A DNA stretch of 64,000 nt from Mytilus californianus. Taxonomy: Eukaryota. The notes under the pieces were generated by a model that saw nothing but the letters and a program-made list of their open reading frames with translations, was not told where the DNA came from and ran no database searches. A program made the translations under genes and the position numbers. Positions 764 to 54,800 of this stretch are shown here, piece after piece; position 1 is the first letter of the stretch, and the number at the start of each line of letters is the position of its first letter. The stretch covers positions 45,074,001 through 45,138,000 of the forward strand of contig NW_026262745.1 in the NCBI RefSeq assembly GCF_021869535.1, written 5' to 3'.

Positions 764-1093
764 AGTGATTGATTGGTGTTTGCTTAACATCGGATCAATG
801 CGAAAAGTCTATATCGTGGCGATGTAAACTATGATTGATTGGTGTTTGCTCTACGCCGCACCAGCGCAAAAGGCTACATCGCGGCGATGTAAACTTTGAT
901 TGATTGGTGTTTGCTCTACGCCGCACCAGCGCAAAAGGCTACATCGCGGCGATGTAAACTTTGATTGATTGGTGTTTGCTCTACGCCGCACCAGCGCAAA
1001 AGGCTACATCGAGACGATGTAAACTTTGATTGATTGGTGTTTGCTCTACGCAACATCAGCGCAAAAGGCTACATCGCGGCGATGTAAACTTTG
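764..1093. repeat. 65-bp tandem minisatellite, about 5 copies, in the last ovo intron
   Basis: gatgtaaact recurs at 821, 886, 951, 1016 and 1081. Each unit holds the inverted repeat tacatcgc-g-gcgatgta. Confidence 0.95.
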
Positions 1094-1322
1094 ACATGTA
1101 AACCTAATATTAAAATAACAATCGTTTAATAAATCGTTAAAGAGAGATGATTCGATATAGTATTTGAATTTAAATATGAAACGTTAAAGGATATATAAGT
1201 CTACTTGTTTTATTGCGTATATTCAAATGAAAGTGTACACATGAATGTATTCATTATGTTCATAACGGAACAGTTCATATGCCTTTTAACAATGTCGACT
1301 TATTGGTAGTAGATGACAACAA

Positions 1323-6251: not shown

Positions 6252-8437
6252 CTGAAAAAAGAAATCTAAAATAGAGAAGATTGCTTAATTAATTTGACGA
6301 AACGAATACAAGTTACACACATGAAAGGGGCAAGACGATCTTCAGTGTTTATTAAAGTATATATGCATTTAATGAGAGTCTTTCGGGCTATTTACTTGAA
6401 ATATTTCTGGAAGACGAGGGCAGACGCAAACAACATAATGAAACACATTTAAGATTTAGAAACTGAAAATTACGACGTGAATACAATTATACATTTATTT
6501 TATACATGTATTTGATATTTATCAGGGTAAGCTGTTGTTTATCGATAGTTTAATTTTATAGGGTATAAAAAAATATAAAATTATCCCATTTATTATCAAT
6601 TTGCCACAGCTTGATTTTTTTATCCTTTCAACATTTACGATAAATGACCGTGGCGACATGTTGGTCAGATCTCTTTATACAGCTGTCACAAGAAAAAACG
6701 TGTTGCATTTCTTTAACAACTTCACAACTGGAATTGCACATTAAGGAATTATGACATTTTAATAGATATGGACACTTAAAAATAGTTTATCTATTGATTG
6801 AAACTTTGGTGATCGCCATTACGACCAGTGTGTGGCCATTTCTGAATTACTCGCCTTTCCTTCTAACATTAAAAAATTATCTATTGAATTTACTGTATTC
6901 GTTGTCACCGCATGTTTTTAATGTTCTGTTGTTTATTATAAGTTGGACTTTAGAGCATGAAAACTGAAAACAAAGTTTGATACTGCTAAATTATTTTTTT
7001 CTAGGCCGAGTGGGAGGAGGGACTTTTCGTTCAGCAAAAGTGAACAGTACATTTGCAAAACCAGATATTTTTTCCATATGCGAGTTATGTTCACAATTCT
7101 TACGTAAACGAAAATAACTTAATTTTTTTCTGCTTGCACGATTACTGAAGCAACGTTTAGAAATTAAATTCAATGTAGTTATCAATGAAGGAGACTATGC
7201 ATATCTTTTAAATCATTAATAAGCACGTGTGTCAATAAGTCAAGCATCATCAAAAATAAATTTCCGTAAAAAGTTATAACTTTTCGATCTTAACTTTAGA
7301 TGATATGCCTGAAGGAATGCTTGAGTTGTCCATTACAGTGGGGAATATTTAAATATTACACACAATTATTTGCATTTCCTGTGCATTCAGTTTATAAAAT
7401 CTTTAATTTTAATAATAATGGGATGTCAAGAATAAATTATCCTTAGTGTACTCTAGGGTTTGATTTGACCTAATTTAAAAGATATTACTTCTTGACATAA
7501 GAATGACACTGACCGGGATTCACTACCGGCAGATGTTCAAATTACTTGACTTTTTCTTCTGGCCAAAACATTGCAAGTGTTTTTTTATAAAGAAGAAAAG
7601 ATACTCCCTAGACTCCCTGCGGACCACCCCTCTGACCCTCATAAGAAAGGTGTCACATCTGTCTTTGGATGTTTATAACGACCAAACAATTTCTACCTGT
7701 CAGGTAGAGCGCAAGGTGCGACAGGTGTTAGAAAATAACAAGTTGGTCATACAGTGGTTCAAGGTAAAAATGTTGAATGGAATTCCTTTTAAATTAACGG
7801 TCATCTCGTTGAGATGATCTTTCATTCATTCAGAATTTTCTATGTGGGAACAAAAACCTGCATTCCAACTTCCCGTTCAATGGTGTATTGGGTTATCAAA
7901 TTTGAATAGTTTAAAAAGACCCCTGCTATTTTATAGGTTAACTGTTTTACATTTTAACTGTTCCCCTGACAAAAGGCCATAATTTTTCGTATTTGCTCTG
8001 TACTTCTCAAAATCTTCAAAATGACACAAAAAATTTAGAAGGGTCATTTTTCTTCGCGTGTCATAAATCGATCGTTAAAAAGTTGACCGCTGTCAACCTT
8101 CGACTCTGAAAAACATTACAAAAATTTCTTTCATATTAAAAGTTCATAAACTTTATCAAAGTGTTTGCTTTGTAATAGTTTAACCTTTGACTATTATATA
8201 AAACATGAACATTTCACGAACGATTACTAATTATACCCCCCCCCCCCCCTCAACGTTAATTTGTAAACTAAGTCATAGTCAAGAGTATGTATCATCTGTG
8301 TGCGCGTGTGACAGATAGGTATACCAGAAAGATACTCTTATTAAATATATTGGAATCTTGAGCTTGCGCGACGCGCTCTTATATAGCAGTATACACGTTC
8401 GTCTACTTGGAACTTATTAATTGCACGGATTGTAAAA

Positions 8438-8530
8438 ACTCGTCAAAGACACCAGGCTTATAACTTTGCATGCTTGACGCCGTTTCGTTTACAAAAGACT
8501 CGTCAGCGGCGCTCGAATCAAAATAGTTAT
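8438..8530 (-). mobile_element. degenerate retrozyme fragment (hammerhead remnant) in ovo intron 1
   Basis: Minus strand reads cgagcgccgCTGACGAgtcttttgtaaacGAAAcggcGTCaagc. Core retained, stems I and II mismatched. Confidence 0.7.
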
Positions 8531-9157
8531 ATAGTCAAATCAAACTATAATGATTTATAAAATACAGTCCATAGTATAATTGATCACGTTTCTTAGATGC
8601 CTTTATTCACGAAACCATTTTGGGTTTTTCGAAGTTTCTTAATCTTGATCTCAGACGGAAAGCTTTCGTTTAATCTGCGTTCTTATTTTTATCAGGTTTT
8701 GGGAAAATATTACAAATAACACGTTCAATTATATCGAAAAAATTTTGGTACGTTCTCATATGAATCCTGGGATTTAATGCAAATTGGATAAAAGTTTCGA
8801 TAATTGCAAGTGTCAGTAAAATCGAATGGATTTTCTTATCAGACTAATAAATCACCGATCATTTTAATTAATTTATCGCCGTTTAAGAAGGAAGTGCTAA
8901 GATTTCACAAATACATAACGGGCAATAACTCAATAGGTGTTACTTAACAAAGTTGATTAGGAAATATGATGAAGCAACCGTTGTAGGATAAAATGGAATT
9001 TTCACAACGACAAGCGTGTAGTGTTGACATCTTGTCAATCGAGAAATTACTTAATTTGCGTGTTATTAGACTAAGCCCATAATAACATCAATTTTGGTCG
9101 GAATAAAATATAGATAGTGGAATGATTGTAACAGATCTGACCGTCTATCCACCAAGA

Positions 9158-16900: not shown

Positions 16901-19289
16901 TATATACTTTGAAAGTCTAAAATTGATGAACTAAAAGTTTGTAAAGTTACTAATTCTGACATTTTGTCCTAACATTTTTTTGTTAAACCCCAAGGAATGA
17001 CTGGAGTTTAGAAATATGGAAATCCCGACTGTCATTAAATTCTTGCTAAGGTGGTGCGTTTGTTTGGCTTTCCCGGGATGTATAAATACGCATTCACGAA
17101 AGATCGGAACGGGGACATTAAATCCGATGCCTCTTGTAAGGTATCTGAGAAAGATTGTATCACACAATGAGCCTTACAAACATCGATTATACTTGATTAA
17201 TTGTTGTTTGCTTCTGTTCAGTGGCAAGTATTTCATCAAGAACGAGCATCTATATAAGATGAGTTGCATACTACTTTCATAATTATAAAGGTTTTAGTCT
17301 TAACCCGAGTCTGAGTGTAAATTCACGGTCTAATTTTTCAAATCGTCGACAAAGGCTTATTTTATGCAAATCGTTGATTTTTGTCCTGAAGTAATTTTGT
17401 TTGCAAACCTAGCTACTTAAACAAACTATTTTCAGGAACAAAAATGGATAATGTATATCTATTTCAGAGATCAGACCTTTGTGTAGCCAAAATACTAAAA
17501 CAATAAATTATCCGATTCGCCCTTTTGAACTAAAAGCATCAGTTCCACGAAACACACAAACTTCAGAGTCCACAACAAGAGAACAGAATTTTACGGTTAT
17601 TGGAAGACAGGGAGTCAGGACAACACAATAATCAATTACTAGTAAGCAGGGGTTGAAATTTTGAAATTTTGAATATATACAAAAGAGGCCTGGAATGTCT
17701 CGGGTATAAAGGCTGCCCGGCATTTCTCTGGATCTACATCGAAATGATTGCATAAGGTCATTTTGCATTTTGAAAGCCGGGTAATCAACGGTAATCAAAG
17801 CACATTATAGTTTTTCATCGAAATCACATTTTTATACTTTTGTTCCACTAAATGTCAACGTTTAACAGCTTGACAGGCCATTTTTACTGGCTTAGTGTAA
17901 TAATCTCAAAAAGACCTATAATCAGAAAGGTCAATTTTGCCTGAGGCAGATGCTCAGTTTTACGTAGTAATTAAAAGTGCTGCACCCAAAGAGGACAGGA
18001 GAAGAGTTAAAAGTACATTTCTTTTTTGAAAATTTACTTCGGTACAGGTGTGTATTCCGTGCAAAGCCGACACATTTTATAGTTTCAAACCTTTAAATGA
18101 CTTCCTTCTTGGCCTATCTGAGCCCAAGCCTTCAAACCAAATATAACATCATTCTTTAGGTAGATGAAATTTTGATATTGGCAACGTTATTGAAAGATCT
18201 ACAACCTTTATAAGTTTAAAAGTAATTGTGATACCTGGGATCTTTGTGTAAATTTTGATACGAAAAACATTTTTTTTTCTCCAAAATGTAGCTAGACTAC
18301 CACTAAATCTGAGTTCTGAATATAAAAGGCTTTAAATCGTTAACTATTTAAATTACCTTGGATTGATATATTTTTCTAGAACTGGTAAATTAGCTCGGAC
18401 GTAACCCTTTGAGTAAAGATATTATAATACTGAGCTGAAATTTTAAAGAACAAACACATTTAGTTGTGTTTCTTTTATATAAAAAATAAGAAGCACTTGC
18501 ACGTTTTAACTCGTAGGCTTAGATATATATATATATAATGAACGAATGTAGTTTGTCTCTCACATGATTTATCAGGCCTAATATGATGACAACTGTCTTT
18601 AAATTACAGTTGAGGGTTGGCGCCTTAATTCAAACATGTTTTACCCCGCCACATTCTGTATGTGCCTGTCAAAGTCTGGAGCCTGTAATTCAGTGGCTGT
18701 CGTTTGTATCTGTATATCATATTTGTTTTTCGTCAATTGTTTTGTATATAAATCAGGCCGTTGGTTTTTTCGTTTGACTTATTTTACATTTGTCATTTCG
18801 GGGCCTTTTTTTAGGTGACTATGCGGTAAGAGTTTTGCTCATTGTTGAAGATCGTAAGTTGACCTATAGTTGAAAATATCTGTCATATGGTCTCTGGTGA
18901 AGAGTTGTCTGAATGGCATTCACACTGCACCTTCCTATTTTTACATAATCACTTTTGGGAATTCAATTGTAAATAATCATTCTGATAGAAAACAGAACTT
19001 CTGAATTATGCAACTTATAATATTAGGGATTAATATCCATACCATGTTTCACTGCTGATAAGAGAGCTTCTTTGGACAGCAAATATATTAATAACTGTAA
19101 TGCTTCTAAGTTGAGACCTGATCATCAGTGTCTTATGACTTTAATCATCTTAACTGAAAAAAACACCTTTGTAAATTTTTAGAATCATGAAATAAGGGTG
19201 TGTTCTCTGAGTTAATATATGTGACTTTTATTTGTAAACTTCACGTATATTGTTAGGGATTTTATTTTGCAAAAAAAACCTCGATAGAG

Positions 19290-19435
19290 ATATGAGGTTT
19301 ATAATTTTGTACGCCAGACGCGCGTTTCGTTTATAAAAGACTCATCAGAGACGCTAGAATAAAACAATTTAAAAGCCCAAGTAAAGAAGAAAGTTGAAAG
19401 TTGAAAAGCATTGAGAATAAAACAAATTCCAAAAC
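19290..19435 (-). mobile_element. degenerate retrozyme fragment with hammerhead core
   Basis: Minus strand reads gcgtctCTGATGAgtcttttataaacGAAAcgcgcGTCtggcg, with one mismatch each in stems I and II. Confidence 0.75.
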
Positions 19436-22364
19436 AATGTTTTATCAGGATGGTGAACCACTAAACACACAGATTCTAGGACTTGCTTTTTGTAATATTA
19501 TGTGTCTCGATCAGTAGGTCGTGCTAATTTTTTCCTCCACATGGAAGTAGAACCTATTTATGAGTTAACGTGTAAGCTTCAGACAGTCAGTTCCTGAAAG
19601 AATAGAAAGCATTTAGAGAAAAAATGTTGATCGTTATCCAAACAAAGGAAAGACAACTGACAAGTATAATATCGATTTTGACGTAGAGATTTTCAATTTG
19701 CAGATGATTTGGTCCCACATCTTTTCTAATAAGTGAAATTAAGAATCTCTTACAAGATGCCAGTTTAAGTGATCTTTGTTTTAAGATTCATAAATAAATG
19801 TCAGTAAATAAAAAAATAGATGCTAGATTACATTTCAATAACAATTTTCGAAACAACACATCAGTTTCATTATTATTAAGTATAATGTAGTTATAGTATT
19901 GACTGCAATGTGAAATATTATAAAAGTAAAGCTAAATATATTTTTTGGTTTAAAATTCAAAATAAGAGGATTGTTACGAAATTTGACATTTAACAGTATA
20001 ATAGTCCCAGGTTTTACTTTGTACATTTCATAGTGAATGAAATTCGTCTTCAGAAAGAATAGACATGGGATCAAAAATATAATTATCTTAATTATTTTGT
20101 ATATATAAATATTAAAAATACGCATGTTTATTTTTCCTTATTAAAAATAACATATATCTTATTTGTAAACATTGATAAAATCATTTCCGGGAAGGAGACA
20201 AACTGTACAAATGGCACGATAATTAAGTCAAAATTTACTTATTAAAGATCCTTACACGATAAGTATTGGCAACTGAAAAGATTATTAAAAATTCTATGTT
20301 TTTGGACCAATTAACCGTTATATTATTTACTAATCACATCTGCCTAACTGGGTGTCAAACTTCTACAAATATTGATATAACGTTATCTATTGTTGTTCAT
20401 AATAACCATGTTAACGCCATACCCTCTAGGTTTTACGGTACGAAATCTGATACATGCATGTACAACATGCAAGACATATACATTGTAGGACAATAAAAAA
20501 TTGCTCGTAGCGTTAATAATTCATAAATAATCTTCAATTCGAGTTTTACCGTAAATAAAATTGAATTGATTGTGAATGATTTTTTATCTAAAAATAGTTC
20601 GGTTGAAGTTGTGTTAATGCTTGTTATGAGTCCACTTTCTGGTCGATTTTGATGGACTGAAGTCAGAAATAAACAAACAAAATGTTTCTTTAAATTTATC
20701 CTTTTAAAGTCATGAAATAATAGGATTTTTAATAAAGCCTTATTCTATTATATGTTTATATGTCATATATCATGCTTGGTTCAAAATAAAAATAAAATAA
20801 TTTTAAATATGTAATGTGCAAAATATGATTTTTAACAGAAATGATTATAATTGAGAAAAAAAATGTTTCAGGCATTTTGTTATGTTTCATTTGTTACGGA
20901 TGTGTTATATTCTTGTGAGAGTTTGAATATCATTCGTCTTCCCAAAATAAATCAGACGTTACTAGGTTTGCCATCCGATCGGATCAAACATCCTCGGTTG
21001 TTTCGTGCATGGTTTGTAAAAATTTTGAAGACTGAAAAGTCTGGTTCTAGAACTGCCTCAGGTGGCCATACATTTTTCCTGGACGAAACTTTAGATTTTT
21101 TAGACATTGGATTTCATAAAGTGCTCTCCATCAGTTCTTTCTGCAATCATGTTTGTCGCAATTCCCATAGTTGTAAAGCAAAGGGATGGCGAAAATGTAG
21201 TAAGCAGACGGATCGACGGACACCAATTGTTAACAATAGCTTACACTGACTCATTTAGCCAGACGAGCTCAGGACAGTTTGCTGAATCATATACATTTTG
21301 TTTTAAAGAGGATGTTTCATGATTAAATTATTTACCGGTTTTGATATCATTTTGATTGGCCCTTCTTCCTACTTTTTCATTTTATTCGTTTTGATATTTA
21401 GAAATTAAATGATCACTTGGGTAAAATTATGATTATAAAATAAAATTTACGACACCTCTTAAGGATTGAACTGTTACGTATAGTGTCAGAGGTTACATAT
21501 TTCCGGAGGATATTTAGCAACTTGTGAATGTTAAATACTCCAATAAAATAATAAACTGAAATCTTTATTATACATCAGCATGTCAAAATTTGTAAAAATT
21601 ATGATATTGAACAAAAATAAAGATTTCAAAAAATGATATTAAAATGTCATTCATGTCGAAATGCAGAAGATTTTCATCGTAACAAAATTTTAATGTTATA
21701 AACATTTCTTAATATAAAGATAAAAGTATTTGGTATGTTTGTCAATGGAGGGAGTGAACAGGGGTAAGGGAACATGGTAATCAGGTGGCGGAAAAGGGGG
21801 AGTAAAAATAGGATATTCTGGGGAAAATTTTGAGCAATTTTTCGTCTTGGAGTATTGGGGAGGGAAGTGGGAGTAGGGGAAGGAAGCGGAAATCAGGGAC
21901 CTTTCCACCCCTCTCAATGAGCAAGCTATCAACCATGGGCCAAAGGAAGAGGATGTAAACAACTATATAGTGCACTATACGGCCTTTAACAATGAGCATA
22001 ACCAATACGCATAGAAAGCGATAAAAGGACCCGGTATGACAATACTTGAAACCATTCAAATGAGAAAACCAACGGCCTGATTTAATGCACACACAAAAAA
22101 ACAACAAACGAAAAACAAATAAGACAGACAGCAACCAACGATAACCACTGAATTACAGGCACATACAGAATGTGCCGGGGTTACGGACCTGTTTACCTTT
22201 TCAATGCAACCTATCATTTTTTGTAATTCTATTTTATTTCATTGTAATCGTTTTATCAAAAAAAAAATGCCTTAGCCTCGTGATCTACTGTTAAATATCA
22301 GATTTAGCATCGCCAAAACGACTGAATTATCAACGTTTGAAATGAAATGAATAACACAAGTTTG

Positions 22365-31399: not shown

Positions 31400-32139
31400 T
31401 CACGACAAGTTATATTTACCAAATCGTGTTTTGAAGGCTTTAATAAGGTTTATACTATCCAACATTATAATAAACAGGAAAACAGTTATTAAAATTATCA
31501 AACCACTGATACCCAAATAACGGACGGATGTTCGGTCATCAGTGGCTGAATTTAGCTTTCTAATGGAGGACGATAACTTCCGCTTTTCAACTCGTAGTGA
31601 CGTTTGCAGGTCAACTAATCTTTGTTGTATTTTCTCCTCTGTATTCAGAGAATCAACGGAACAAGGACAGTAACACGAATCACCAACTGTAGTATCTGTC
31701 CCTGGATTAGTGTTGTACACGTCATCAATTTCTGTTGTGACGGTATTTCCTGTTGTTTCTTGATTAGAGTTTGATTGTGTTGATCTGATTGTTGTATCAG
31801 GCATTGTTGCTTCGTCTGATGTCACTGTTGATCCCTTTTGTATCAAACTTGGAGTTGATTCTGCAGCATCTGGAGTGATTGTGTTGTCAACACCATCAGT
31901 TTCTGTTGTGACGGGTTTTCCTGTTGTTTCCGTAGAGCGTTTTAAAACTGTACTTGTAACGGTAACATCTGCATTTTCTGTTGTCTCTGTTTTTGAAGTT
32001 TCCTGTAACTGAAGCATGGTTGTAATGGTTTCTATGGCTGCTGTTGAGGTTCTTGGCTCAGCTGTTGAAGTTTTAGGCTCAGTTGTTGATGGTCTTTGCT
32101 CAGCTGTTGACGAATCAGTAATTGGTGTAGTCGAATATG
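31400..32139 (-). CDS. IgGFc-binding-like membrane protein, last exon: Thr-rich stalk, CYCPC motif, TM helix, short tail
   Basis: Acceptor tattgtag at 32141-32140 (phase 1). Thr/Ser/Glu-rich, then SCYCPC...LRVEKRKLSSSIRKLNSATDDRTS, then hydrophobic YLGISGLIILITVFLFIIML, then stop at 31400. Confidence 0.85.
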
Positions 32140-35100
32140 CTACAATATAAATCAAAACATTTTTATAATACATTTTAGACTTATCAAATGATAGTCTTTA
32201 GTAATGACAATTTTTTACTGTTGGACTTTTGAACGACTTCAGTGCAATGATCACGGAAAGGATAAGTCACGGTTACTTATTAAAGATCATAGAGATCAAA
32301 GCTGTTACGATTAACCAGTATTACTTCGTGAATCTTTCATTGGTGTTTACGAACATCCATGCAGTGGAATCCCTTGTTGTTTTTGAACATCTTGTTGCAA
32401 AAAGTTTCATTCATGTAATCAGAGGGAAAACCAACTGTACAATGGATTAATATTTTATACGTTCTGCAATTGGTTTTAGCGACGGGATAGTCAGTAAATT
32501 TTGACTGGCACTGGGAAAGAGAACACGGTGTATATATAGATTTGAAAATTTTGCCTGTCAACAGGCAACTGTATTATACGTGACCTTCTTTAATTTTGTT
32601 TTACATTTTTTTGATTTGCTGAGAGCGTGACTACAGGCACACAACGTCGAATCTCAAATCTTCATTTTTGATGGACATAGATTAAGGGAAAAGCAAGATT
32701 TTGATTGGTCAAATACCAGACTATTTAAAAAATTCATGTAAGTTTAAGCGCTACGTCCAACAGACAGGGAACAATGTCATCGTTAGTGCGAATATTAGAG
32801 CGCCCACTCATTATTTTTTTTTGGGGGGGGGGGAGGGATATTCCCCCCACATGAATATTTACTTTCAATCATTGTGAGAATCGAGTAATTATTATTAATA
32901 CTGAAATATTGCATAAATATTATTTTTTCATGCACAACCCTTTCCAACATTTTGCGGTGATGATGTTTATTTTGAAAGATTACCTGTTTTTGCTAGTAAC
33001 GATGTCAGGTGGACTTTTTTCATATCTCCTCCCCATTCCCCCAATATCCCATTCCCAAATATCTGTCTTACTCCATGTATATACATGTTCGTCCTAACTA
33101 TTCATGCAATTATCTACATTCTTTTTGATTTGACATATGATTAAATCTAGTTATATAGTTTTTGAAAATTAGTTTACAGAATTGATTTTAACTTTCTTTT
33201 TAATCATCATCAATAAAATATACATCGTATAGAAAAGAAATGTACTTATGCAAATCTTCTATTCAGAGAACCTATTGGCCATCAAACGATTCATGACCTA
33301 TTATCAAAAACTTTCCTCCTTTTAATCTTTCCTTTTACACATGACCGATTTGTCTTTCAGCAAAATCGAATACTCAAGTACCATATTCAATAAATAAAGA
33401 TAAATCTGAAGTAACTCAAATCTTTATTGATATTTCTAGTAATTCGTTTGCATTAATTTAAAATGCAATACAATTATTTATCTATCGCGAAAAGAAGAAA
33501 ATTATAATTAACGATTAATTCATAACAAAGGATAACCGTAACGGTAAGTAGAAGGTTTATGATAAAAAAAAATTAATTCTGGATTAACGGAAAAATCCAA
33601 TCGAGTAAGAATTCATTCCACTTCCCTAGGTGCGCTGGTTTGCTGCAATGAAGAGCTACGACTAGCAGTTATCTCTCCGCAACTTCCATGTGATAATTGG
33701 TTGAATTAGAGATTTCCAATAAAATGACATATGTACGTAACTCGACGTATGGACGTAATGGGACGGGTTATTGCCAACCATCGAATTTGATTGAATACGT
33801 CGCTTAAGTTTAAACAAAGTATTCCAAGACTTTTAAAATCACACACTGGAATGTTTGTCCATACAATTTTTTTTTATCATGACGAAAAATGATAGAAATA
33901 TTGCATTTTTATTTATCACGTGGTTTTCCAGATTCCCGCCTTTATTTTACTGAAATATTATAAGATCACATTAACAAACGTATCCCATACCATACCTATC
34001 GTACGTACGATTCGAGTTATCTTTCGTGGTTTTGATTATGACAATTATTTTTCAATATACTTTGCAGATGAACTCCCCGTTATACTTTTTTTCTGTCTTT
34101 CTTTATAGTTTATCTATCTTTTAATTATATTTGTTGCGGGGGAAATATTTAGAAGGATATGTTTCTGACAATTTCAGAAATATCGAAAGCAGAATTTGTC
34201 AAAATCTCTCTTATAAAGGTTGAAAATTCAGATATAACTATCGCTTCCATTTAATTTATAAACAAAATTATTTTTCATTTATTATAAAATGTATTGATAA
34301 AGAAATCCCTATAAATGTTAGTTTTTTTCTTTAGAATTAAGGTGTGTTCGATTAGGGATTGTTCTGTATTAATTTGTTTAACGGGAATACTATCGGAGTC
34401 AAAATACAAAAGATATTTCCAGGGAATATATTTGATATCCCTTGAAGTGAACTAACTTAGAGTATTTTATCCATTTTATTGATAAACAACTTAAAGGGTG
34501 TCATCGAATTCATTTTAATGAGTACATCATACGGGGATGTGTAAGGTATACGTAAGTAACATTGAACAACATAAAATAATAACATTTTGTTGTCCGCTCC
34601 TTATCCAAGATGCATCCTAAAATGAACAAGGTAGATACAGATATCTTTTTTAAGTAACAGACAAAGTGTAACTCGCAAAAAACTTTTTTTTTGTTTTGAT
34701 CAGGAATCTATCTGAATTCAAATACCTAACCGAATCCTGAGAATTAAGCCTTTAACAAGAAGTTTCATTGAAATATATTGATTAAATGCGCACTAAAAAT
34801 ATTTTTTCATGATATAATTCCACAAATCTGAATTTTTCATAGACAGTATCTTTTTGCCATTGTGTGACCTATCAAGAGTATGATCACCTACACCTATTTT
34901 GCGATTCTTATTTTCAATAAACCGTTCACTCCCTACAAGCATTGGCGTCTTTAAACCAAGATCATTTACCTCACCAGAAATAAAATTCAAGTTACGCTAC
35001 TGTCGATTGATTGACAGTTGGTTGCTTAACGTCCAGTGGCAAATATTTAATGCATAATTAACGTGTAGAGAGCGAGACATTATATCTAAAAGAGGCATCG

Positions 35101-36936: not shown

Positions 36937-37527
36937 CTTAAATACACAAAATAAATAGATAGCCATAATAAAAAGTAAGTTGGAAACAAATCTGATCAAA
37001 TGTTGTAAAATGTTATAGAAAATAAGAAAGACACCGCAAATGGGGTTTCACTAATTGTTATAAATATCAAAGTAGATATAAAAATAGTCTAATTTATTTG
37101 TTTTGTTTTTGTACTTTTTGCGTAATAATTTACAGATAATTCTTTTATCTTCTCCCAACTGGAATTGTAAGAGACCTAACAGACCATAAACAAGAAAAAT
37201 AAGTGCACGACACCACCTATCAAGACAAAGATCGATAAATCTAAATGAAAACGTCATTTCTTATTTCAAACTAAATCAAATGGGTTTATCTTATTCCAAC
37301 GTTCTAAATACAGCTGTAATAATATTCGCTGACGATAACGCATCTTATTATCAATAATTAAGCTAATAAAACACCAAAACATTGATGATTTTTTTGTGTG
37401 TTTATCAGACTTTGTTGTACAATGTTCACATTCAAATGAAAGAGATGGATAAAACTGATTAAAAATATCCTAATTAGGATTGCTGTCTCGTTGAGTATTC
37501 CTCACTTATCCTTTGTAAATACTAAAG

Positions 37528-37736
37528 GATTTTCTACCCCAGAAATATATGACTGTACCTGAATTTAGCAAAACCTTTCAGAATTTTGGGTCCTTATAAT
37601 GCGCTTCAACTTCGTATTTCATTTTGCTTTTTTAACTTTTTTTTATTCGAGCGTCACTGATAGTACTTTTGTAGACGAAACGCGCGTTTGGACTAATTAG
37701 GTTTTTTAATCCTGGTATTTATGATGAGTTTATTTT
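37528..37736 (+). mobile_element. retrozyme fragment with mutated hammerhead
   Basis: gagcgtcaCTGATAGtacttttgtagacGAAAcgcgcGTTtgga plus flanks shared with the 47288-47693 monomer. Core and stem I are damaged. Confidence 0.75.
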
Positions 37737-38275
37737 AATTTATATCTAAATAACAACGTTCAATGCCGATCAATGTACCGAAAACATGCTTCCCGGAATA
37801 TCCTGCATCAGATACGCTGGAGACTATAAGCCAAATACAGTAAATAATGGTGAGTATAGCAAATCCAAAACGAGTCTTAAAAAGATTGATGAATGGATTT
37901 GTATAAAACGTCTAGTGGCAAATATAACATGTGTATCATTACGAGAACTGAATATGAATCCGGCGTTGTACTATAGACCGACACTCTGAGTCATATTTTA
38001 ACGTTCCAGTTCTCAAGAATGACATGTTACTCTACCCGGTCACATTATTTTTGACTCCGAACTTAATAGTCTTTGCTCTTTCTCTCTAATGCCTGGTTCT
38101 TAGCGGAGAACCACCAATATCAATTTTCAAGACTTTGGTTAGATTCGACAGGGGATCGACTTCACAATCTCCCTCACTGGAATTGAACACGAAAGCGTTA
38201 CCACGAAACCACTGAAGCGATACGTCCAAGAAGGCAATATCGTTATATTGATTAAAAAATCAAATGACTCATTAC

Positions 38276-38375
38276 TTATTGTGGCATTCAATGCATTATA
38301 GCATGGGTCTTCGTCGATAACACCATCACAGTCATTGTCAATACCATCAATCGTCTCTAATCTCGGTATACAGTC
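38276..38375 (-). CDS. IgGFc-binding-like protein, second DNDCDG exon (DCIPRLETIDGIDNDCDGVIDEDPCYNALNATI)
   Basis: Acceptor aatttcag at 38377-38376 (phase 0, matching the 41560 donor). Donor A|GTAATG at 38275 is weaker. Paralogous to exon 45905..45995. Confidence 0.75.
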
Positions 38376-39530
38376 CTGAAATTATAATATAAATATATAA
38401 GGTATACGATACATGAACTTAATCAAAGTCTACTCCATGCACCTTCAACTCTGGTCGATACAAATTCACATATACGTTTCTATATAATAAGAAAATAGTC
38501 AAGCTTATCATTATTTCTTTTGGCTTATAAAAGTTTCGGAAACTGCAATTCATACAATTCATCTTTTGTTGTACTGTTACACCACTTCCCAGGTTAGAGG
38601 GATGGTTTGGCTCCAGAAAACATGTTTAGCCTCGCCAAATTATGTATGTGAAGTCCCAAGTTAGGAGCCTGCATTTCATTGGTTGTCTTTTGTTGCTGTG
38701 TATCATAATTGTTTTTCGTTTATGGTATTATACATAAATCCGTTAGTTTTCTCGTTTGAATTGTTTTACATTTGTCATGTCGGGGTCTTTTATAGCTTAC
38801 TATGCGGTATGGGTTTTGATCATTGTTGAAGGCCATATGGTGACCTATAGTTGTTAACTTCTGTGTTATTTGGTCTCTTGAGGAGGACAGTCTCATTGGC
38901 AATCATACCACATCTTCTTAATTTTATAATGGAGTCTTCATCACTGACACCGTGACAACAGCATTATCCCTTGATTCAGATATAACTATTATTTCAGTGT
39001 TACTATGGCAAATATATCATCCACTATGGGGTTAAATGTATTGGCTTGAAAACATGTAAGAAATAATTCTAGAACCTCATTTATGATATCGTAACAGACT
39101 AACCGTCGTTATAATATCATAAACCATCTATTCAGCTACACACTATCAACCAACTTATGTTCACGAGATATTTTTTTTGCGTCTTTCGAAGTAAAAAAAA
39201 CGGGAAATATAAATCGTCGCGACCATGTCACACAATGAAAATGCGACAAGAAAGTTAACACCGAAAAAGTAAATCACTGGATAAGTAGATTGGGCTTTAA
39301 CACGAAAAGTTGTTATATCGCAATAGTTAGTTGGTTTGTAGTTCTGAAGGAATCATATAACCCACAAATAAATAAGGTATTTAATTGACATTCAAAAGAA
39401 CCACACCTTTCTTCTCTTCTTCATATGTGCAGAAAAGAAATTTTTATAGAAATGTCACTGTATACACTCATCCGTACCATCAGCGCCATTACCCACATCA
39501 TCAGTCTCCTGTCGCATCAAATGTCAAATG

Positions 39531-39797: not shown

Positions 39798-40511
39798 AAT
39801 GTCAAATCACAGTTATTGTTAATATTTGTCAGCCTTCTTTGTATCGGATGTCCAGTTCTCTGTGTTTCAGTGTAAATAGTAATTTTATGCTAAGGTTGTA
39901 ATACAAACTCATGAACTGAAGACAGTCAAGCATCACAATGTTAAAAGAAAAAGACGAAAAAAATGAAATAAGTGTACAAAAGCATTACTCATGCAGAAAG
40001 ATAAAGAATTAACAACAAGGAACCCACCAAAAATTATGGATCAACTATGAAGGTAATCCACAGAAATGGAATATACACTAAACAATACACGACAGAACTA
40101 AACGAAAGCAACAGCAACGAGAATGAGTTTAAAAAGTAGAGGTCAACCCGGGTGCTCAGAAGGTTAATCGATTCTTGTTGCACTATTGAAATCCGTCGTG
40201 TCGCTGATGACATCAATAAATGACATATCCGTTTGCCTTAACCATGGATATCTTTTGAGCATAGACCTTAAACTATTCCTCTCTATAAGATACCTAGTTT
40301 ATCACATTTAACTCAACAGTTACGCCATCGATCTATGATTCAGCTTTGCACCCCTGAAATCATCATGCAAATGAATGCATCACATTTTCAATAGCAACAT
40401 TTTGAATTATTCTGTGTACACTAGGCATAAATGGCCTCAGCCATATTTTGGAGTTTTTGGTTTTCAATGCTCTTCAACTTCGCTTTTGGTTCCGTCTTCC
40501 AAATGTCTTGA

Positions 40512-41290
40512 TTCGAGTGTACTTGTAAGTATCATGTAAACTAAACGCTTGTCTGGCGTAGTAAATATTCGAGTGTATTTGTAAGTATCATGTAGACTAA
40601 ACGATCGTCTGGCGTACTAAATGTTCGAGTGTACTTGTAAGTATCATGTAGACTAAACGATCGTCTGGCGTACTAAATGTTCGAGTGTACTTGTAAGTAT
40701 CATGTAGACTAAACGATCGTCTGGCGTACTAAATGTTCGAGTGTACTTGTAAGTATCATGTAGACTAAACGATCGTCTGGCGTACTAAATGTTCGAGTGT
40801 ACTTGTAAGTATCATGTAGACTAAACGTTCGTCTGGCGTACTAAATGTTCGAAATAAACTCATCATAGATACCAGATTTGAAATTTTATATTTGCGCCAG
40901 ACGCGCGTTTCGTCTACAAAAGACTCATCAGTGACGCTCGAATCAAAAAATGTTAAAAAGGCCAAATAAAGTACGAAGTTGAAGAGCAGTGAGGACCAAA
41001 AATTCCTAAATGTTTTTCCAAATACAGCTAAGGTAACCTATTCCTGAGGTAGAGTGTACTTGTAAGTATCATGTAGACAAAACGCTCGTCTGGCGTACTA
41101 AATGTTTGAGTGTACTTGTAAGTATCATGTAGACTAAACGCTCGTCTGGCGAACTAAATGTTTGAGTGTACTTGTAAGTATGATGTAGACAAAGCGATCG
41201 TCTGGCGCACTAAATGTTTGAGTGTACTTGTAAGTATCATGTAGACTATCTTCCTATATCTATAAACGCTCGTCTGACGTACTAAATGTT
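40512..41290 (+). repeat. 56-bp minisatellite (10 units) homologous to the retrozyme hammerhead, interrupted at 40853-41051
   Basis: Units start at 40512, 40568, 40624, 40680, 40736, 40792, 40848 (split, resumes 41052), 41105, 41161 and 41217. Confidence 0.92.
40853..41051 (-). ncRNA. 199-bp retrozyme fragment with intact type I hammerhead (40895-40936)
   Basis: Minus strand reads cgtca-CTGATGA-gtc(ttttgta)gac-GAAA-c(gcgc)g-TC-tggcg, identical in the core to the 47607-47648 copy. Confidence 0.85.
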
Positions 41291-41559
41291 TAGCCTAGTA
41301 CCAGTATCGTTGATGAGTTATTACTACACTATTGCATGAATTCATACTTCTTATTTAGTCTTTTCTACTCGCACTTCATTTCAAATCATAACATATAACG
41401 ATATTTGATCTGTTGTTTTGAATATCTTGACATATTTACACTGTAATTGAAAAAAAAAACATGAAATAAAATAAACCTGAAATAAACAATACCGATTAAA
41501 ATTCCTTTGAAATTAAAAAAAATACTTCTATAGAATTAATACAATAGAAATTAAGATAC

Positions 41560-42803
41560 CTGTACAATTTGCTGAAATAACATACTTGCAACGTATGCGT
41601 AACTGTATCCAGGTAAATTCGAACCATCAGTTTTCTTTGCACTACCGGCAAAAATGTAGATAAATATGTCTCTATCTGTAGTTATGCTATGGACACCAAT
41701 GCCAATTTCGTGATGAGCAGCCTGTGGCAAAAGTGTACCATCTAAGGTAACTTCTACAACACTCCCAATACTTGAAATATAACCAACAAAGAAAGTGGTA
41801 CTTGCTTCAAATGGAGTCTCTGGAACTACAAACACGCTATTTGACGTATACTGGTCCGTACTAGGTAGGACAAGATTAGAAGGATTTACACCTATATTTA
41901 AAGGCATATACACAGTCACTGATATTTCTTTTTCTGCTAAAATGTTTATTACACATTGCTGTAATGTTAAATGAAAAATTTCAGTAACATAAGAACCAGA
42001 ATAGTTCAGAGATAGGTACATACTTATACCACACTGAGACGAATTAACGGTCACGTGGTTTTTATTTCCTCTTGACATAATTGTAAGTTTGACATATTGA
42101 ATATCAGGAAAAGGGGGACTAATATAGTGTTTTCCCCATGTTTGTGTATGTAACATTTGTTCCGTGACAAACCCCTTGTCTTCTGAAAGACCACCACAGA
42201 AAACTGCTATAGGTTTATTTGCACTAATTCTACTTCCTGTAATGTCGTCCGTTCCGGTAAATTGATACGTTTCACGTGATTTCATTTTAAAAGTTATCAG
42301 CTCGCCGTATCGATATATTCGAAAATTGCTTGAACTGAGAGTATGGTTTGCTCCAAGAGACAACAGGATTCTTACTTTGGTGTTATCCTTTGTAGCAACA
42401 ATAACACATTTACCATCTTTGCCTTTTATTTCCGTGACCGCAAAATAGTCAAAACCTATGGAGTCTGCCGGGTATACAAGAAAAGAACTTACTGCACTTT
42501 CAGTAGAAATATATTGGGCCACTACCAAAATATCACTTGTTGATGTAATCTTTATACCAAACGTTCCGTGAAAAGTCGTATCATACAACAAAATGACGTC
42601 ATATTTTCTAGCTGAAAGTTGTTTGACATCGCCATAGTTCAGGGTTAAGTTCGTTGTCCAGCCTGAATAACTACTTTCCACGTAAATGGTCGCCGGAGTT
42701 GATGTTACTGGTGTCAAAGTTATAGATACATTACTGTATTGGTAGAACTCATTGTCATTCATAAAAGCAAGGAAGAAACTTTTTCCAGCCGTATCAACAG
42801 GGC
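41560..42803 (-). CDS. IgGFc-binding N-terminal-like domain 2 (single 1244-bp exon)
   Basis: PVDTAGKSFFLAFM...SSFLVYPADSIGFDYFAV...DDITGSRISANKPIAVFCG...EQMLHTQTWGKHY fits the IgGFc_binding (FCGBP N-terminal) motif pattern. Acceptor attttag at 42805-42804, donor CAG|GTATCT at 41559. Confidence 0.85.
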
Positions 42804-46665: not shown

Positions 46666-47287
46666 TTGACTTATGATATAAAAATAAGGATATGTGATAT
46701 GTTTGCTAATGAGACAACTATTCACTAAAGTTCAAATGAAGTAGATGTAACTAATTATAGGCAACCGTACGTCCTTCAACAATGAGAAAACTCATACCTT
46801 ATAGTCGGCTATAAAAGGCCCCGACATGAACATATGCAACAATTCAATTGAGAAAACTAACGGCCTTATTTATTACAAAGCAATTAACGGAAAACAAATA
46901 TAACAGAAATGAACCAACGACAATCACTGAACTCCAGGCTCTTGACTTGGGACAGGCACATATAGAATGTGGCGGAGTTGCACATGCTTGAAGGCGAAAA
47001 CCCTCACACTTACCTGGGACAGTGGTGTAACAGTACGACATAAGAAGAAACTATAAAAATCAGTTGAAAAGGGCTTAACTCATCAGATCAATATAAAGCA
47101 GAAAAACATCTAACAAAAACACAGACCGGATGTGGCAGGGTATTTATGCATCCCGAAAAAACAAAAATGACACAAAGTACAGGTCTGATAGTGCTCAAAG
47201 TCAATAACAACTAATAAATAAAATCATGTATTTAAGACTAAAATATCAACCAGTACACATCCAACATCCAATGGAGTTAGTGTAATT

Positions 47288-47693
47288 ATAAAATTTCAAT
47301 CCTGGTATCTATGATGAGTTTATTTACAACCACTGGGTCGGTGCCACTGCTGGTGGAATTTTTATTCCCAGAGGGTATCACCAGCCCAGTAGTCAGCACT
47401 TCTGTGTTGACTTGACTTATCATTGATATGTTCATAATTATAAATCAACTGTTTACAAATCTTGAAATTTTTTGAAATACTAAGGCTTTTCTACCTCAGG
47501 AATAGATAACCTTAGCTGTATTTGGCAAAACTTTTATGAATTTTTGGTTCTCAGTGCTCTTCAACTTCGTACTTTTTTTGGCCTTTTTAACATTTTTTGA
47601 TTCGAGCGTCACTGATGAGTCTTTTGTAGACGAAACGCGCGTCTGGCGCAAATATAAGATTTCAATCCTGGTATCTTTGATGAGTTTATTTAC
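47288..47693 (+). ncRNA. full-length retrozyme monomer (366-bp period) with intact type I hammerhead at 47607-47648
   Basis: About 40-bp terminal direct repeat (cctggtatct at 47301 and 47667). Core cgtca-CTGATGA-gtc(ttttgta)gac-GAAA-c(gcgc)g-TC|tggcg, cleavage predicted after C47643. Confidence 0.88.
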
Positions 47694-47953
47694 AGTCGGT
47701 GAAAAAAAGAGAATTTGATTATCCCTTTGGTATCTTTCACCTCTCTCTTCACTAAGTTTTACGGTCACCGTCATGAATTGGTTGACCGATACGACAAATC
47801 TGTGTCTCAACTAACTCATAACCGATATGTATTCGCAGTCTTAAATCTTTAGATACCAAAATAATCGTCTAATTTGTAATTTTATCGATTGAGTCTTATT
47901 CTCGACTATTATTCTGAATTCAGCACAAGTTACTTCTGAAAATTAACACTGAA

Positions 47954-50311: not shown

Positions 50312-50571
50312 CTGTGAAAAATAAAAAGAATCATAGATATTCGTCATTAATATATGTTTACATTGTTTTTATTTCATTGTAGACTAATTATATTTACATG
50401 TACTTATTTTTTTACATTCGTATATTTATGGGTCGATTTCGAATTGACGAAGTTTTATTACTTTTATGCGTATATTCGTTCTCTCTGCGTTTTACGTTTG
50501 ATGTATGCTTTCAATACACTTTTATATGAGCAAGAACCAGTAAGATTGAACATACGGATATATATTCATAT

Positions 50572-50650
50572 TTGAGCGTCACTGAGTCTATTGTAGATAA
50601 AACGTGCGTCTGGCGTAGGAAATTATTAGCCTGGTATCTTTGATGAGGTT
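50572..50650 (+). mobile_element. retrozyme fragment, hammerhead core broken
   Basis: gagcgtcaCTGA(3-nt deletion)gtctattgtagataaaacgtgcgtctggcg. CUGAUGA is truncated and GAAA is lost. Confidence 0.7.
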
Positions 50651-50925
50651 TTTTTCAACAATAGACAAATGTATGATTCCATGATCTTAATCATTCTAAG
50701 TCTAGAAAATATATGATTTACACTGGACTGGGTGTGTTGTCTCTTTGACAAATTCCCAAACCCATTCTCAATTCTATAAACTTAAGCAAAGGTAAATCAT
50801 CAAAACATTAACATACAGCGTTCCCCAAGTGCCTTCCGGTATGAATTTGCCGTTATCAAGAACGCTTATAGTCAGCAAAAAATATAGGAAAGCAAAAGAA
50901 TTACTTCCTGGTTTTGTTAATCGAG

Positions 50926-54362: not shown

Positions 54363-54800
54363 TTTTTGTCTCGCCTTGACGGAGTCAAAAAGCGAGACTT
54401 ATGTATGCTATTTCCGATGGCGGCGGCAGCGGCGTCGGCGGCGTCAACAATGTATTAGTTTGTGATTAGGTCAGTTTATGGATAACCACTAGTGATAGGT
54501 CAATGCTATTTGGTATGCAGTTGTGTTAGCATTGGCTCATCTCATTTTCATGGAGATTATTTTGTCATGTCTCCTCAGTCATGTCTATTGACTTTGAAAA
54601 GTTTACATGTATTAGTTTGTGATTAGGTCAGTTTAAGGGGGACCACTAGTGGTAGGTCAATAGTATTGGTGTGTAGATGCATTAGCATTGACACATCTCA
54701 TCTCCATGGAGATTATTTGGCTCTTTTCCCACAGTCATGGTCTATTGACTTTGAATATTTTGTATAGTTCATATGTAAAAGTTTGTGATTAGATTAGTTT
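54363..54800 (+). mobile_element. HINE/pearl-like element with nested hairpin, (GGC)n and about 157-bp tandem units
   Basis: gtctcgc...ttgac-gga-gtcaa...gcgagac hairpin, then ggcggcggcagcggcgtcggcggcgtc, then units starting at 54450 and 54607 and a partial third. Confidence 0.65.

What the first reader, a model, noticed from the sequence alone, without database searches (positions are those of the whole stretch)
40425..41323. A minisatellite made of a dead hammerhead ribozyme, split by an antisense live copy
Seen: the 56-bp unit (ttcgagtgtac-ttgtaag-tatcatgtagac-taaa-cgatc-gtc-tggcgtactaaatg) aligns block by block with the hammerhead (ttcgagcgtca-ctgatga-gtcttttgtagac-gaaa-cgcgc-gtc-tggcg). 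The array is flanked by the retrozyme's normal upstream (gctcttcaacttcg) and downstream (gatgagtta) sequence. So only the ribozyme segment of one element was amplified 10 times, after its catalytic core was lost (CUGAUGA and GAAA absent in all units). Unit 7 is interrupted at ttcga|...|gagtgt by a 199-bp opposite-strand retrozyme piece with an intact core and 1-2-bp junction microhomologies. Inference: homology-guided insertion or template switching. Any transcript would hold a hammerhead plus several partly complementary units that could pair with it and inhibit it. I know of no description of this arrangement.
Basis: partly seen in the sequence, partly recalled or inferred. Interest (0 to 1): 0.8.

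Follow-up and report, generated by a model that had tools for sequence, protein, structure and literature searches.

The report
Dead-hammerhead minisatellite with nested retrozyme
An old, decayed copy of a very abundant mussel jumping element (a hammerhead-ribozyme "retrozyme") has had its already inactive 56-base ribozyme segment copied ten times in tandem, and a younger truncated copy of the same element family later landed in it backwards; the description is accurate, but ordinary repeat processes explain it and nothing shows a function.

Summary
Ten 56-bp units lie at 40512-40852 and 41052-41288. They align to the family's type I hammerhead far better than any shuffle. They sit between the normal upstream and downstream sequence of a diverged retrozyme copy.

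- **Dead units.** All ten carry the same core-destroying changes, and none scores as a hammerhead in Rfam.
- **Insert.** Unit 7 is split by a 199-bp minus-strand retrozyme piece whose hammerhead (40894-40937) scores 34.0 bits, exactly Rfam's gathering score.
- **Insertion mechanism.** One end of the insert is the family's usual 3' terminus. The other is an arbitrary 5' truncation. Five other copies in this window show the same pattern. So this is ordinary Penelope-type retroposition of a different subfamily into an older array, not homology-guided insertion.
- **Abundance.** The family is extremely abundant. The 56-bp unit appears private to this locus.
- **Folding.** The flanking antisense units would sequester the hammerhead (about 26 against 5 kcal/mol). 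No RNA read is attributable to the locus.
- **Assembly.** Contigs from three independent runs confirm the array edges. The insert junctions and the unit count were not checked with long reads.

An unchecked note of this scan (s1-312186) reports another hammerhead-born minisatellite elsewhere in this genome. Verdict: a real, neat curiosity that ordinary repeat processes account for.

The parts
40445..40511 (+). Upstream segment of the old host retrozyme copy (GCTCTTCAACTTCG... up to the hammerhead)
   Evidence: BLAST 40446-40558 against reference monomer positions 254-369, 74% identity, E 1.8e-16; alignment A1
40512..40852 (+). Left sub-array: units 1-6 of the 56-bp dead-hammerhead minisatellite plus the first 5 nt (TTCGA) of unit 7. 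Units 3, 4 and 5 are identical
   Evidence: TRF period 56, 6.1 copies, 97% matches; unit list; no Rfam hammerhead hit at E up to 10
40853..41051 (-). 199-bp 5'-truncated copy of a younger retrozyme subfamily (TGGCGCAAATAT type), antisense to the host. The end at 40853 is the family's usual 3' terminus; the end at 41051 is the truncation point
   Evidence: 94% identity over 202 bp to 47490-47691; shared 3' end in all copies; loose ends in reads diverge at 40852 and continue with family sequence at 41053
40894..40937 (-). Type I hammerhead motif with intact core (CUGAUGA, GAAA, GUC cleavage triplet) and a short palindromic helix III
   Evidence: RF00163 34.0 bits, equal to the gathering score, E 1.1e-05 and 1.1e-04 on the whole window
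41052..41288 (+). Right sub-array: rest of unit 7, then units 8, 9 and 10. Unit 10 carries a 16-bp insertion at about 41249-41264. This side is more diverged than the left
   Evidence: TRF period 56, 3.5 copies, 94%; unit list; contigs of X2 (41111-41248) and X7 (41072-41188)
41289..41328 (+). Downstream tail of the host retrozyme copy (TTTAGCCTAGTACC...GATGAGTTATTACTACA), ending at the family's usual 3' end
   Evidence: Alignment A1; printed 3' ends; BLAST to 50600-50663, E 4.7e-4
47284..47694 (+). Comparator, not part of the locus: full 366-bp retrozyme monomer with about 45 bp of terminal redundancy and an intact hammerhead at 47606-47649
   Evidence: Self-BLAST 47284-47328 against 47650-47694, 93%; RF00163 34.0 bits
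41551..42762 (-). Context: 403-aa ORF with an IgGFc_binding domain, ending at a candidate splice donor (CAG|GTATCT) about 230 bp before the array in gene orientation
   Evidence: ORF list; Pfam PF17517 E 1.4e-33; the donor is read from the sequence, an inference

Best explanation
This is the product of three ordinary, separate events at one locus of a mussel genome. (1) An old copy of the hammerhead-bearing non-LTR retrozyme family (TGGCGTAC subfamily) inserted here and decayed. Its ribozyme lost four catalytic nucleotides and part of helices I and II. (2) A 56-bp stretch, covering the whole dead ribozyme plus 9 nt downstream, was duplicated between two TT sites. It then expanded in place by replication slippage or unequal exchange into a private minisatellite. 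(3) A younger copy of a sister subfamily retroposed into unit 7 in the opposite orientation by target-primed reverse transcription of the Penelope-like type. It kept the element's normal 3' end and lost its 5' half. The left sub-array then kept expanding (units 3-5 are identical). Shown: the anatomy, the homology, the dead and intact motifs, the shared 3' end with variable 5' ends, and the private status of the unit. Inferred: the order of events, the enzymes and the lack of function. The predicted pairing of the intact hammerhead with the antisense units follows from the inverted arrangement and need not be selected.
For: Array and homology. All ten units share the same core changes. Mean pairwise unit difference is 6.1%, while the unit differs from live hammerheads by about 20-25%, so most divergence predates the amplification. 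The edge units are the most diverged and the inner ones are identical, as expected for DNA-level turnover. Seven family copies in the window end within about 4 nt of GATGAGTTTATTT(ACA). Their 5' ends differ, giving lengths of about 95, 130-155, 170, 200, 224 and 410 bp. Reads from many other copies diverge at 40852 with low agreement and continue with family sequence beyond 41053. Host and insert belong to different subfamilies, 74% against 94% identity to the 47k copy. Summed word depth over the hammerhead bin is 5e4-9e4 times the unique flank depth, but only about 1-8 times over the 56-bp units. Family sequence fills 2.7% of this window. Published descriptions of Penelope-like elements and animal retrozymes report strong 5' truncation, adjacent inverted truncated copies and opposite-strand hammerhead pairs 100-700 bp apart. 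They also report mussel retrozymes of 350-390 bp (PMC8557442, PMC4209133, PMC7229834, 10.64898/2026.07.22.740005).
Against: There is no clear target-site duplication (0-2 bp) and no poly(A). The retroposition scar therefore rests on the shared 3' end and the 5' truncation alone. The insert ends 3-4 nt short of the 3' end of most copies. Only seven copies were examined. Summed word depth is not a true copy number. The unit covers almost exactly the ribozyme, which could hint at a ribozyme-related cause that was not tested. The insert junctions were not confirmed by independent long reads.
Confidence: 0.8

Rival explanations
1. One reading: the antisense piece entered by homology-guided insertion, or by a replication template switch (microhomology-mediated) that copied a nearby genomic retrozyme copy into the homologous dead unit.
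For: The junctions share 1-2 bp. A 94% identical copy lies 6.5 kb away at 47490-47691. The target is itself family sequence.
Against: The insert is antisense, so host-insert homology cannot align the two. One end falls at the family's canonical 3' terminus, within about 4 nt. That is expected for retroposition and would be roughly a 2% coincidence for a random template switch (the 2% is my estimate). There are 12 differences from the nearby copy. At least 8 positions in the insert differ from the family majority, so it is not a recent local copy. Chance nesting is expected at this family density.
Confidence: 0.07
2. The array was made by reverse transcriptase, not by DNA slippage. Either repeated template jumping over the hammerhead region occurred during retroposition, or a 56-nt mini-circle RNA bounded by cleavage sites was copied by rolling circle.
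For: Retrozymes are proposed to be copied from circular RNA in more-than-unit lengths (PMC4209133, PMC7229834). The unit covers the whole ribozyme. An unchecked note of this scan (s1-312186) reports another array born inside a hammerhead of this genome.
Against: The array edges (40512 and 41288) do not coincide with the cleavage site GUC|UGGCG, which lies 14 nt inside the unit. A dead ribozyme cannot make the mini-circle. The units are much more alike (6.1%) than the host is to any relative. Units 3-5 are identical, so DNA-level turnover is needed anyway. Other notes of this scan report many unrelated 46-56-bp minisatellites in this genome (unchecked).
Confidence: 0.07
3. The arrangement is functional: a minus-strand (possibly intronic) transcript folds into a long imperfect hairpin. 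This either silences the intact hammerhead so that it does not cut the host pre-mRNA, or feeds small-RNA or editing pathways against retrozymes.
For: Enforcing hammerhead helices I and II costs about 5 kcal/mol in the insert alone or in a normal monomer. It costs about 26 kcal/mol once one antisense unit flanks it. The duplex of hammerhead and antisense unit is -51.4 kcal/mol against -17.7 +/- 3.7 for shuffles. The 313-nt fold has z = -2.8. The intact motif is sense to a neighbouring IgGFc_binding ORF on the minus strand.
Against: Any inverted nested repeat gives such a hairpin. In the one RNA run sampled (about 6% of it read), no read lay on the units or the unique flanks, and 96% of reads on the retrozyme part ran on into unlike sequence, so they come from other copies. 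This type of hammerhead has a weak helix III and cleaves slowly or as a dimer (PMC4209133, PMC7229834), so a lone copy needs no inhibitor. The unit is private to one locus, with no sign of conservation.
Confidence: 0.04
4. Assembly artefact: the array length or the inverted insert results from mis-joining of repeats.
For: Penelope-type tandem and inverted structures are known to trouble assemblies (PMC8557442). No listed contig bridges 40852/40853 or 41051/41052.
Against: Contigs from three runs, three studies and two organism labels reproduce flank-to-array joins on both sides. They also reproduce the order of unit-specific variants in units 7b-10. Unit 7 is split cleanly, with both halves present and no loss.
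Confidence: 0.03

Closest known systems
Animal non-LTR retrozymes (type I hammerhead repeats of mussels and other metazoans; Cervera and de la Pena 2020, PMC7229834)
   Same: The hammerhead type is the same, and the GC content is low (0.36-0.37). The monomer size of the full copy in this window (366 bp) falls within the published 350-390 bp for a mussel. The family is very abundant and is present in RNA reads.
   Different: The host copy is a decayed single copy. Only its 56-bp ribozyme segment is repeated, and no unit is catalytically competent. The insert is a 5'-truncated fragment, not a tandem of monomers, so neither can release a circular RNA.
Penelope-like element insertion architecture (Arkhipova and colleagues; PMC8557442) and hammerheads in their terminal repeats (PMC4209133)
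   Same: Strong 5' truncation with a fixed 3' end, inverted truncated copies next to direct ones, and opposite-strand hammerhead pairs a few hundred bp apart.
   Different: Here the two copies differ in age and subfamily, so they come from two events and not one complex insertion. No reverse transcriptase gene is present at the locus.
Transposon-derived minisatellites and satellites, including tandem-repeat cores inside bivalve mobile elements (PMC3879986, PMC7492417, PMC6947457)
   Same: An internal segment of a mobile element is amplified in tandem in place. The edge units are more diverged than the inner ones.
   Different: Those arrays are carried by many copies of the element and spread with it. 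This unit is at about single-locus depth.
Hammerhead-bearing satellite DNAs (newt satellite 2, Schistosoma Sm-alpha and W-elements, Dolichopoda pDo500; PMC2837043, PMC8490949)
   Same: Tandem repeats in which every unit contains a hammerhead-derived sequence.
   Different: Their units are hundreds of bp long and the ribozyme is conserved and active. Here the unit is little more than the ribozyme, and it is dead.

Membership tests
Hammerhead ribozyme type I (Rfam RF00163), the insert's motif | Covariance-model score at or above the gathering score; conserved core CUGAUGA...GAAA and an H-ending cleavage triplet | tested here: met
   34.0 bits against a gathering score of 34, over the full model 1-45. 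The core and GUC are read from the sequence. The score is only borderline, exactly at threshold.
Hammerhead ribozyme type I (Rfam RF00163), the insert's motif | Self-cleavage activity | not testable with these tools
   Needs in vitro transcription. The published mussel retrozyme cleaves slowly, kobs about 0.1 per min (PMC7229834).
Hammerhead ribozyme type I (Rfam RF00163), the 56-bp units | Conserved catalytic core and model score | tested here: not met
   No hit on any unit at E up to 10. In the alignment CUGAUGA reads CUUGUAA and GAAA reads UAAA, AAAA or AAAG, with a 1-nt deletion in helix I.
Non-LTR retrozyme (animal) | Type I hammerhead inside a non-coding repeat of about 170-400 bp with low GC | tested here: met
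   Met for the family: the 366-bp monomer at 47284-47649 has GC 0.37 and an intact hammerhead.
Non-LTR retrozyme (animal) | Two or more tandem monomers, so that two ribozymes can excise a unit that circularises | tested here: not met
   At this locus there is one intact hammerhead in a 199-bp fragment and ten dead ones. The 47k copy has 1.1 units with one hammerhead.
Non-LTR retrozyme (animal) | Expression as circular RNA | tested here: inconclusive
   RNA reads of the family are present on both read directions in X21 but come from other copies. Circularity cannot be seen in them.
Penelope-type (target-primed) retroposed copy | Common 3' terminus with variable 5' truncation among copies | tested here: met
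   Seven copies in the window; loose ends in reads.
Penelope-type (target-primed) retroposed copy | Mobilisation by a Penelope-like reverse transcriptase and GIY-YIG endonuclease | not tested
   No such gene was examined in this window. The link rests on the literature (10.64898/2026.07.22.740005, PMC8557442).
Minisatellite | Head-to-tail repeats of a 10-100-bp unit, several copies, at one locus | tested here: met
   TRF period 56, 6.1 + 3.5 copies. Word depth over the units is about 1-8 times the unique depth.

The most novel reading that the evidence does not exclude
Hammerhead segments of retrozymes may be recurrent seeds of short-period arrays in this mussel genome; a second case is noted elsewhere by this scan but is unchecked. 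Possible causes are hairpin or palindrome-induced slippage, or reverse-transcriptase jumping at ribozyme-processed RNA. Arrays that capture an antisense live copy would then act as hairpin-RNA loci that restrain retrozymes or protect host introns from ribozyme cutting.
Probability: 0.06. Interest if true: 0.55.

Novelty: new member of a known kind. Interest (0 to 1): 0.2.

Why it matters
If it were more than chance, it would point to a link between ribozyme structure and repeat birth, or to a host or element mechanism that masks an intronic self-cleaving RNA. As it stands, the locus is a clean textbook illustration of three things. A retrozyme copy decays. An internal transposon segment becomes a private minisatellite. 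Penelope-type truncated copies nest in older ones. It also gives a dated ordering of those events. The locus may be useful as a marker, through variable unit number and presence or absence of the insert, but it opens no new question.

Tried and rejected
- **Rfam, default filters.** The whole window at gathering threshold found nothing. The hammerheads appeared only with the laxer E-value mode, so the first blank was a filter effect.
- **First motif pattern.** It had the wrong spacer length and found nothing. The corrected pattern found four sites.
- **Metagenome scan.** An exact scan of metagenome contigs for the dead-core unit gave 0 hits. This is uninformative, because mussel DNA is not expected there.
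- **Earlier notes by sequence.** The search of earlier findings by sequence gave nothing.
- **Literature.** A search for 'hammerhead ribozyme' plus 'minisatellite' returned 7 papers, none describing such an array.
- **Downstream exons.** Pfam on seven ORF pieces (six downstream of the IgGFc_binding exon) gave only a sub-threshold MopE-type motif at 38142-38381. The intronic position therefore remains an inference.
- **Large protein searches.** Not used. The family scan had already named the neighbouring ORF, and it is peripheral.
- **One complex Penelope-type insertion.** I rejected this for host plus insert, because the two differ in subfamily and in divergence (74% against 94% to the same reference).
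- **Array edges at the cleavage site.** Rejected: the cleavage site lies 14 nt inside the unit.

Full report
**What is in the sequence**

Tandem Repeats Finder reports a 56-bp period twice. There are 6.1 copies at 40512-40852 (97% matches) and 3.5 copies at 41052-41246 (94%). Reading the units one by one gives:

- six full units from 40512;
- the first five bases of a seventh (TTCGA);
- 199 bp of other sequence (40853-41051);
- the rest of unit 7 (GAGTGT...);
- units 8 and 9;
- a tenth unit that carries an extra 16 bp at about 41249-41264 and ends at 41288.

**Is the unit a hammerhead derivative?**

The window holds a full copy of the element at 47284-47694. It is a 366-bp monomer with about 45 bp of terminal redundancy. 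The unit consensus aligned to that copy's hammerhead region scores 24. By comparison, 5000 dinucleotide-preserving shuffles give 4.2 +/- 1.8 with a maximum of 15, and 4883 random segments of the window reach at most 19. Identity is 75-81% to five of the six family copies tested and 64% to the sixth, c8k.

The homology does not stop at the unit. The 66 bp before the array together with unit 1 match the element upstream of and into its ribozyme (BLAST E 1.8e-16). The 40 bp after the array match the element's tail. So the array sits exactly where one ribozyme should be in an otherwise collinear, diverged copy.

**Dead and live motifs**

With permissive filters, Rfam finds Hammerhead_1 at 40894-40937 on the minus strand. 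The score is 34.0 bits, exactly the family's gathering score. The identical motif at 47606-47649 scores the same, and a degenerate one at 19311-19354 scores 26.2 bits. No unit is reported even at E up to 10.

In the alignment the core box CUGAUGA reads CUUGUAA in the units. GAAA reads UAAA (AAAA or AAAG in two units). One base of helix I is deleted, and the third pair of helix II is broken. By established mutagenesis of the hammerhead, G5, A6, G8 and G12 are each essential, so the units are catalytically dead.

All ten units share these changes, including the two most diverged edge units. The units differ from each other by 6.1% on average but from live copies by 20-25%. Homogenisation within the array could in principle have spread the changes later.

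**Which element and which genome**

Earlier notes of this scan name the genome as the California mussel and list many retrozyme arrays. I did not verify the species. The published mussel retrozymes are 350-390 bp repeats with a type I hammerhead that lacks the usual loop-loop contacts and cleaves slowly (PMC7229834). That matches the 366-bp, 37% GC monomer here. Helix III of the live motif is a 2-bp stem with a palindromic GCGC loop. This is the form described as working best in dimers (PMC4209133).

**How the antisense piece got there**

BLAST and an alignment of all family copies in the window show seven copies or fragments:

| Copy | Coordinates | Strand |
|---|---|---|
| c8k | 8392-8547 | - |
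| c19k | 19273-19443 | - |
| c37k | 37512-37735 | + |
| host | 40445-41328 | + |
| insert | 40853-41051 | - |
| ref47k | 47284-47694 | + |
| c50k | 50570-50660 | + |

They all end within about four bases of GATGAGTTTATTT(ACA). They begin at very different internal positions.

- **3' end.** The insert's left end in window coordinates is this common 3' terminus.
- **5' end.** Its right end is an arbitrary internal point.
- **Reads from other copies.** Contigs and reads from thousands of other copies diverge from one another at 40852. At 41053 they continue with the family sequence AAAGCCTTAGTATTTC.

A fixed 3' end with variable 5' truncation is the scar of target-primed reverse transcription. 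For Penelope-like elements the literature describes strong 5' truncation, adjacent inverted truncated copies and hammerhead pairs on opposite strands 100-700 bp apart (PMC8557442, PMC4209133). [quoted passage not shown]

Three points separate host and insert:

- The insert is antisense to its host, so homology could not have guided it.
- Only 1-2 bp are shared at the junctions, and unit 7 is otherwise intact (0-2 bp duplicated, nothing lost).
- They belong to different subfamilies (TGGCGTAC... against TGGCGCAAATAT... after the cleavage site) and have different ages, 74% against 94% identity to the same reference.

They are therefore two separate events and not one complex insertion.

Chance nesting is not surprising. 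Family sequence makes up 2.7% of this window. Summed word depth over the hammerhead bin is 5e4-9e4 times that of the unique flanks in three DNA runs. This is a rough measure and not a copy number.

**History of the array**

The array edges imply a first duplication between two TT sites 56 bp apart (GA|TTCGAG and ATG|TTTAGCC). The edge units are the most diverged. Units 3, 4 and 5 are identical. The left sub-array is tighter (2.3 differences per pair) than the right (4.3). This fits DNA-level slippage or unequal exchange that went on after the insert had split the array.

Word depth over the units is only about 1-8 times the unique depth. The unit is thus private to this locus, or nearly so, and is not a dispersed satellite or a subfamily with a variant ribozyme. 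Other follow-up notes of this scan describe many 46-56-bp minisatellites in the same genome. One unchecked note describes another array born inside a hammerhead. Minisatellite birth seems frequent here, which lowers the surprise further.

**The proposed pairing**

- Enforcing hammerhead helices I and II costs about 5 kcal/mol over the optimum in the 199-nt insert alone, and 5.5 kcal/mol in a normal monomer.
- It costs about 26 kcal/mol as soon as one antisense unit is present on each side. The pair probabilities of the ribozyme helices then fall to zero.
- The duplex of hammerhead and antisense unit is -51.4 kcal/mol, against -17.7 +/- 3.7 for shuffled units.
- The 313-nt fold has z = -2.8.

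This holds for any inverted nested repeat.

In the one RNA run that could be laid (about 6% of it read), reads fell only on the retrozyme-family parts, and 96% of them ran on into unlike sequence. None lay on the units, the unique flanks or the neighbouring exon. There is thus no evidence that the locus is transcribed, and the sampling was too shallow to show that it is silent.

**Context**

A 403-aa ORF at 41551-42762 on the minus strand carries an IgGFc_binding domain (Pfam E 1.4e-33). It ends at a plausible splice donor about 230 bp before the array in gene orientation. The array may therefore lie in an intron, with the intact hammerhead sense to the gene. A possible next exon at 38142-38381 has only a sub-threshold motif match, so this remains an inference.

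**Assembly**

Contigs from three runs, three studies and two organism labels cover these stretches with few differences:

- unique left flank into unit 2 (39900-40608);
- units 3-4 (40627-40712);
- units 7b-10 (41072-41248);
- unit 10 into the right flank (41219-41900).

The array and its edges are therefore real and shared among individuals. No listed contig bridges the insert junctions, short-read contigs cannot count identical units, and the reads tool is capped at one call.

**Verdict**

The description is accurate and well observed. The mechanism proposed for the insertion is not supported. The regulatory idea is possible on paper only.

The locus is best read as a decayed retrozyme copy whose dead ribozyme segment became a private minisatellite, later hit by an ordinary truncated retroposition of a sister subfamily. 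I found no paper describing a minisatellite whose unit is a dead hammerhead. It is nonetheless a particular case of well-known processes: transposon-derived tandem repeats and nested Penelope-type insertions. I rate it a new member of a known kind, with low interest.

Noticed in passing
window 41551-42762 (-): A 403-aa uninterrupted ORF with an IgGFc_binding domain (Pfam PF17517, E 1.4e-33). It ends at a candidate splice donor. A possible further exon with an IDNDCDG-type metal-binding motif lies at 38142-38381 (-), and a Thr/Ser-rich mucin-like ORF at 31403-32197 (-).
   Followed up: partly
window 47284-47694 (+): A full 366-bp retrozyme monomer with about 45 bp repeated at both ends and an intact hammerhead. 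Its 5' end lies only about 10-15 nt downstream of the ribozyme cleavage site.
   Followed up: partly
window 8392-8547 (-), 19273-19443 (-), 37512-37735 (+), 50570-50660 (+): Four more 5'-truncated copies of the same family, all sharing the 3' end. The one at 19311-19354 keeps a sub-threshold hammerhead (26.2 bits). The one at 50570 has lost part of the CUGAUGA box.
   Followed up: partly
window 41249-41264: A 16-bp insertion (TCTTCCTATATCTATA) inside unit 10, flanked by short CTAT repeats. Its origin is not explained.
   Followed up: no
window 766-1094, 1323-2280, 54450-54755: Other tandem arrays in the window: 65 bp x 5, 106 bp x 9.1 (98% matches) and 157 bp x 1.9. None resembles the hammerhead unit by eye.
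   Followed up: no
window 40838-41105 in RNA run X21: RNA reads of the retrozyme family lie on both read directions (about 317 against 185 in the core bin). Many run from the element's 3' end into diverse flanks. This suggests read-through transcripts of many genomic copies besides any circular RNA. The strandedness of the library is unknown.
   Followed up: no
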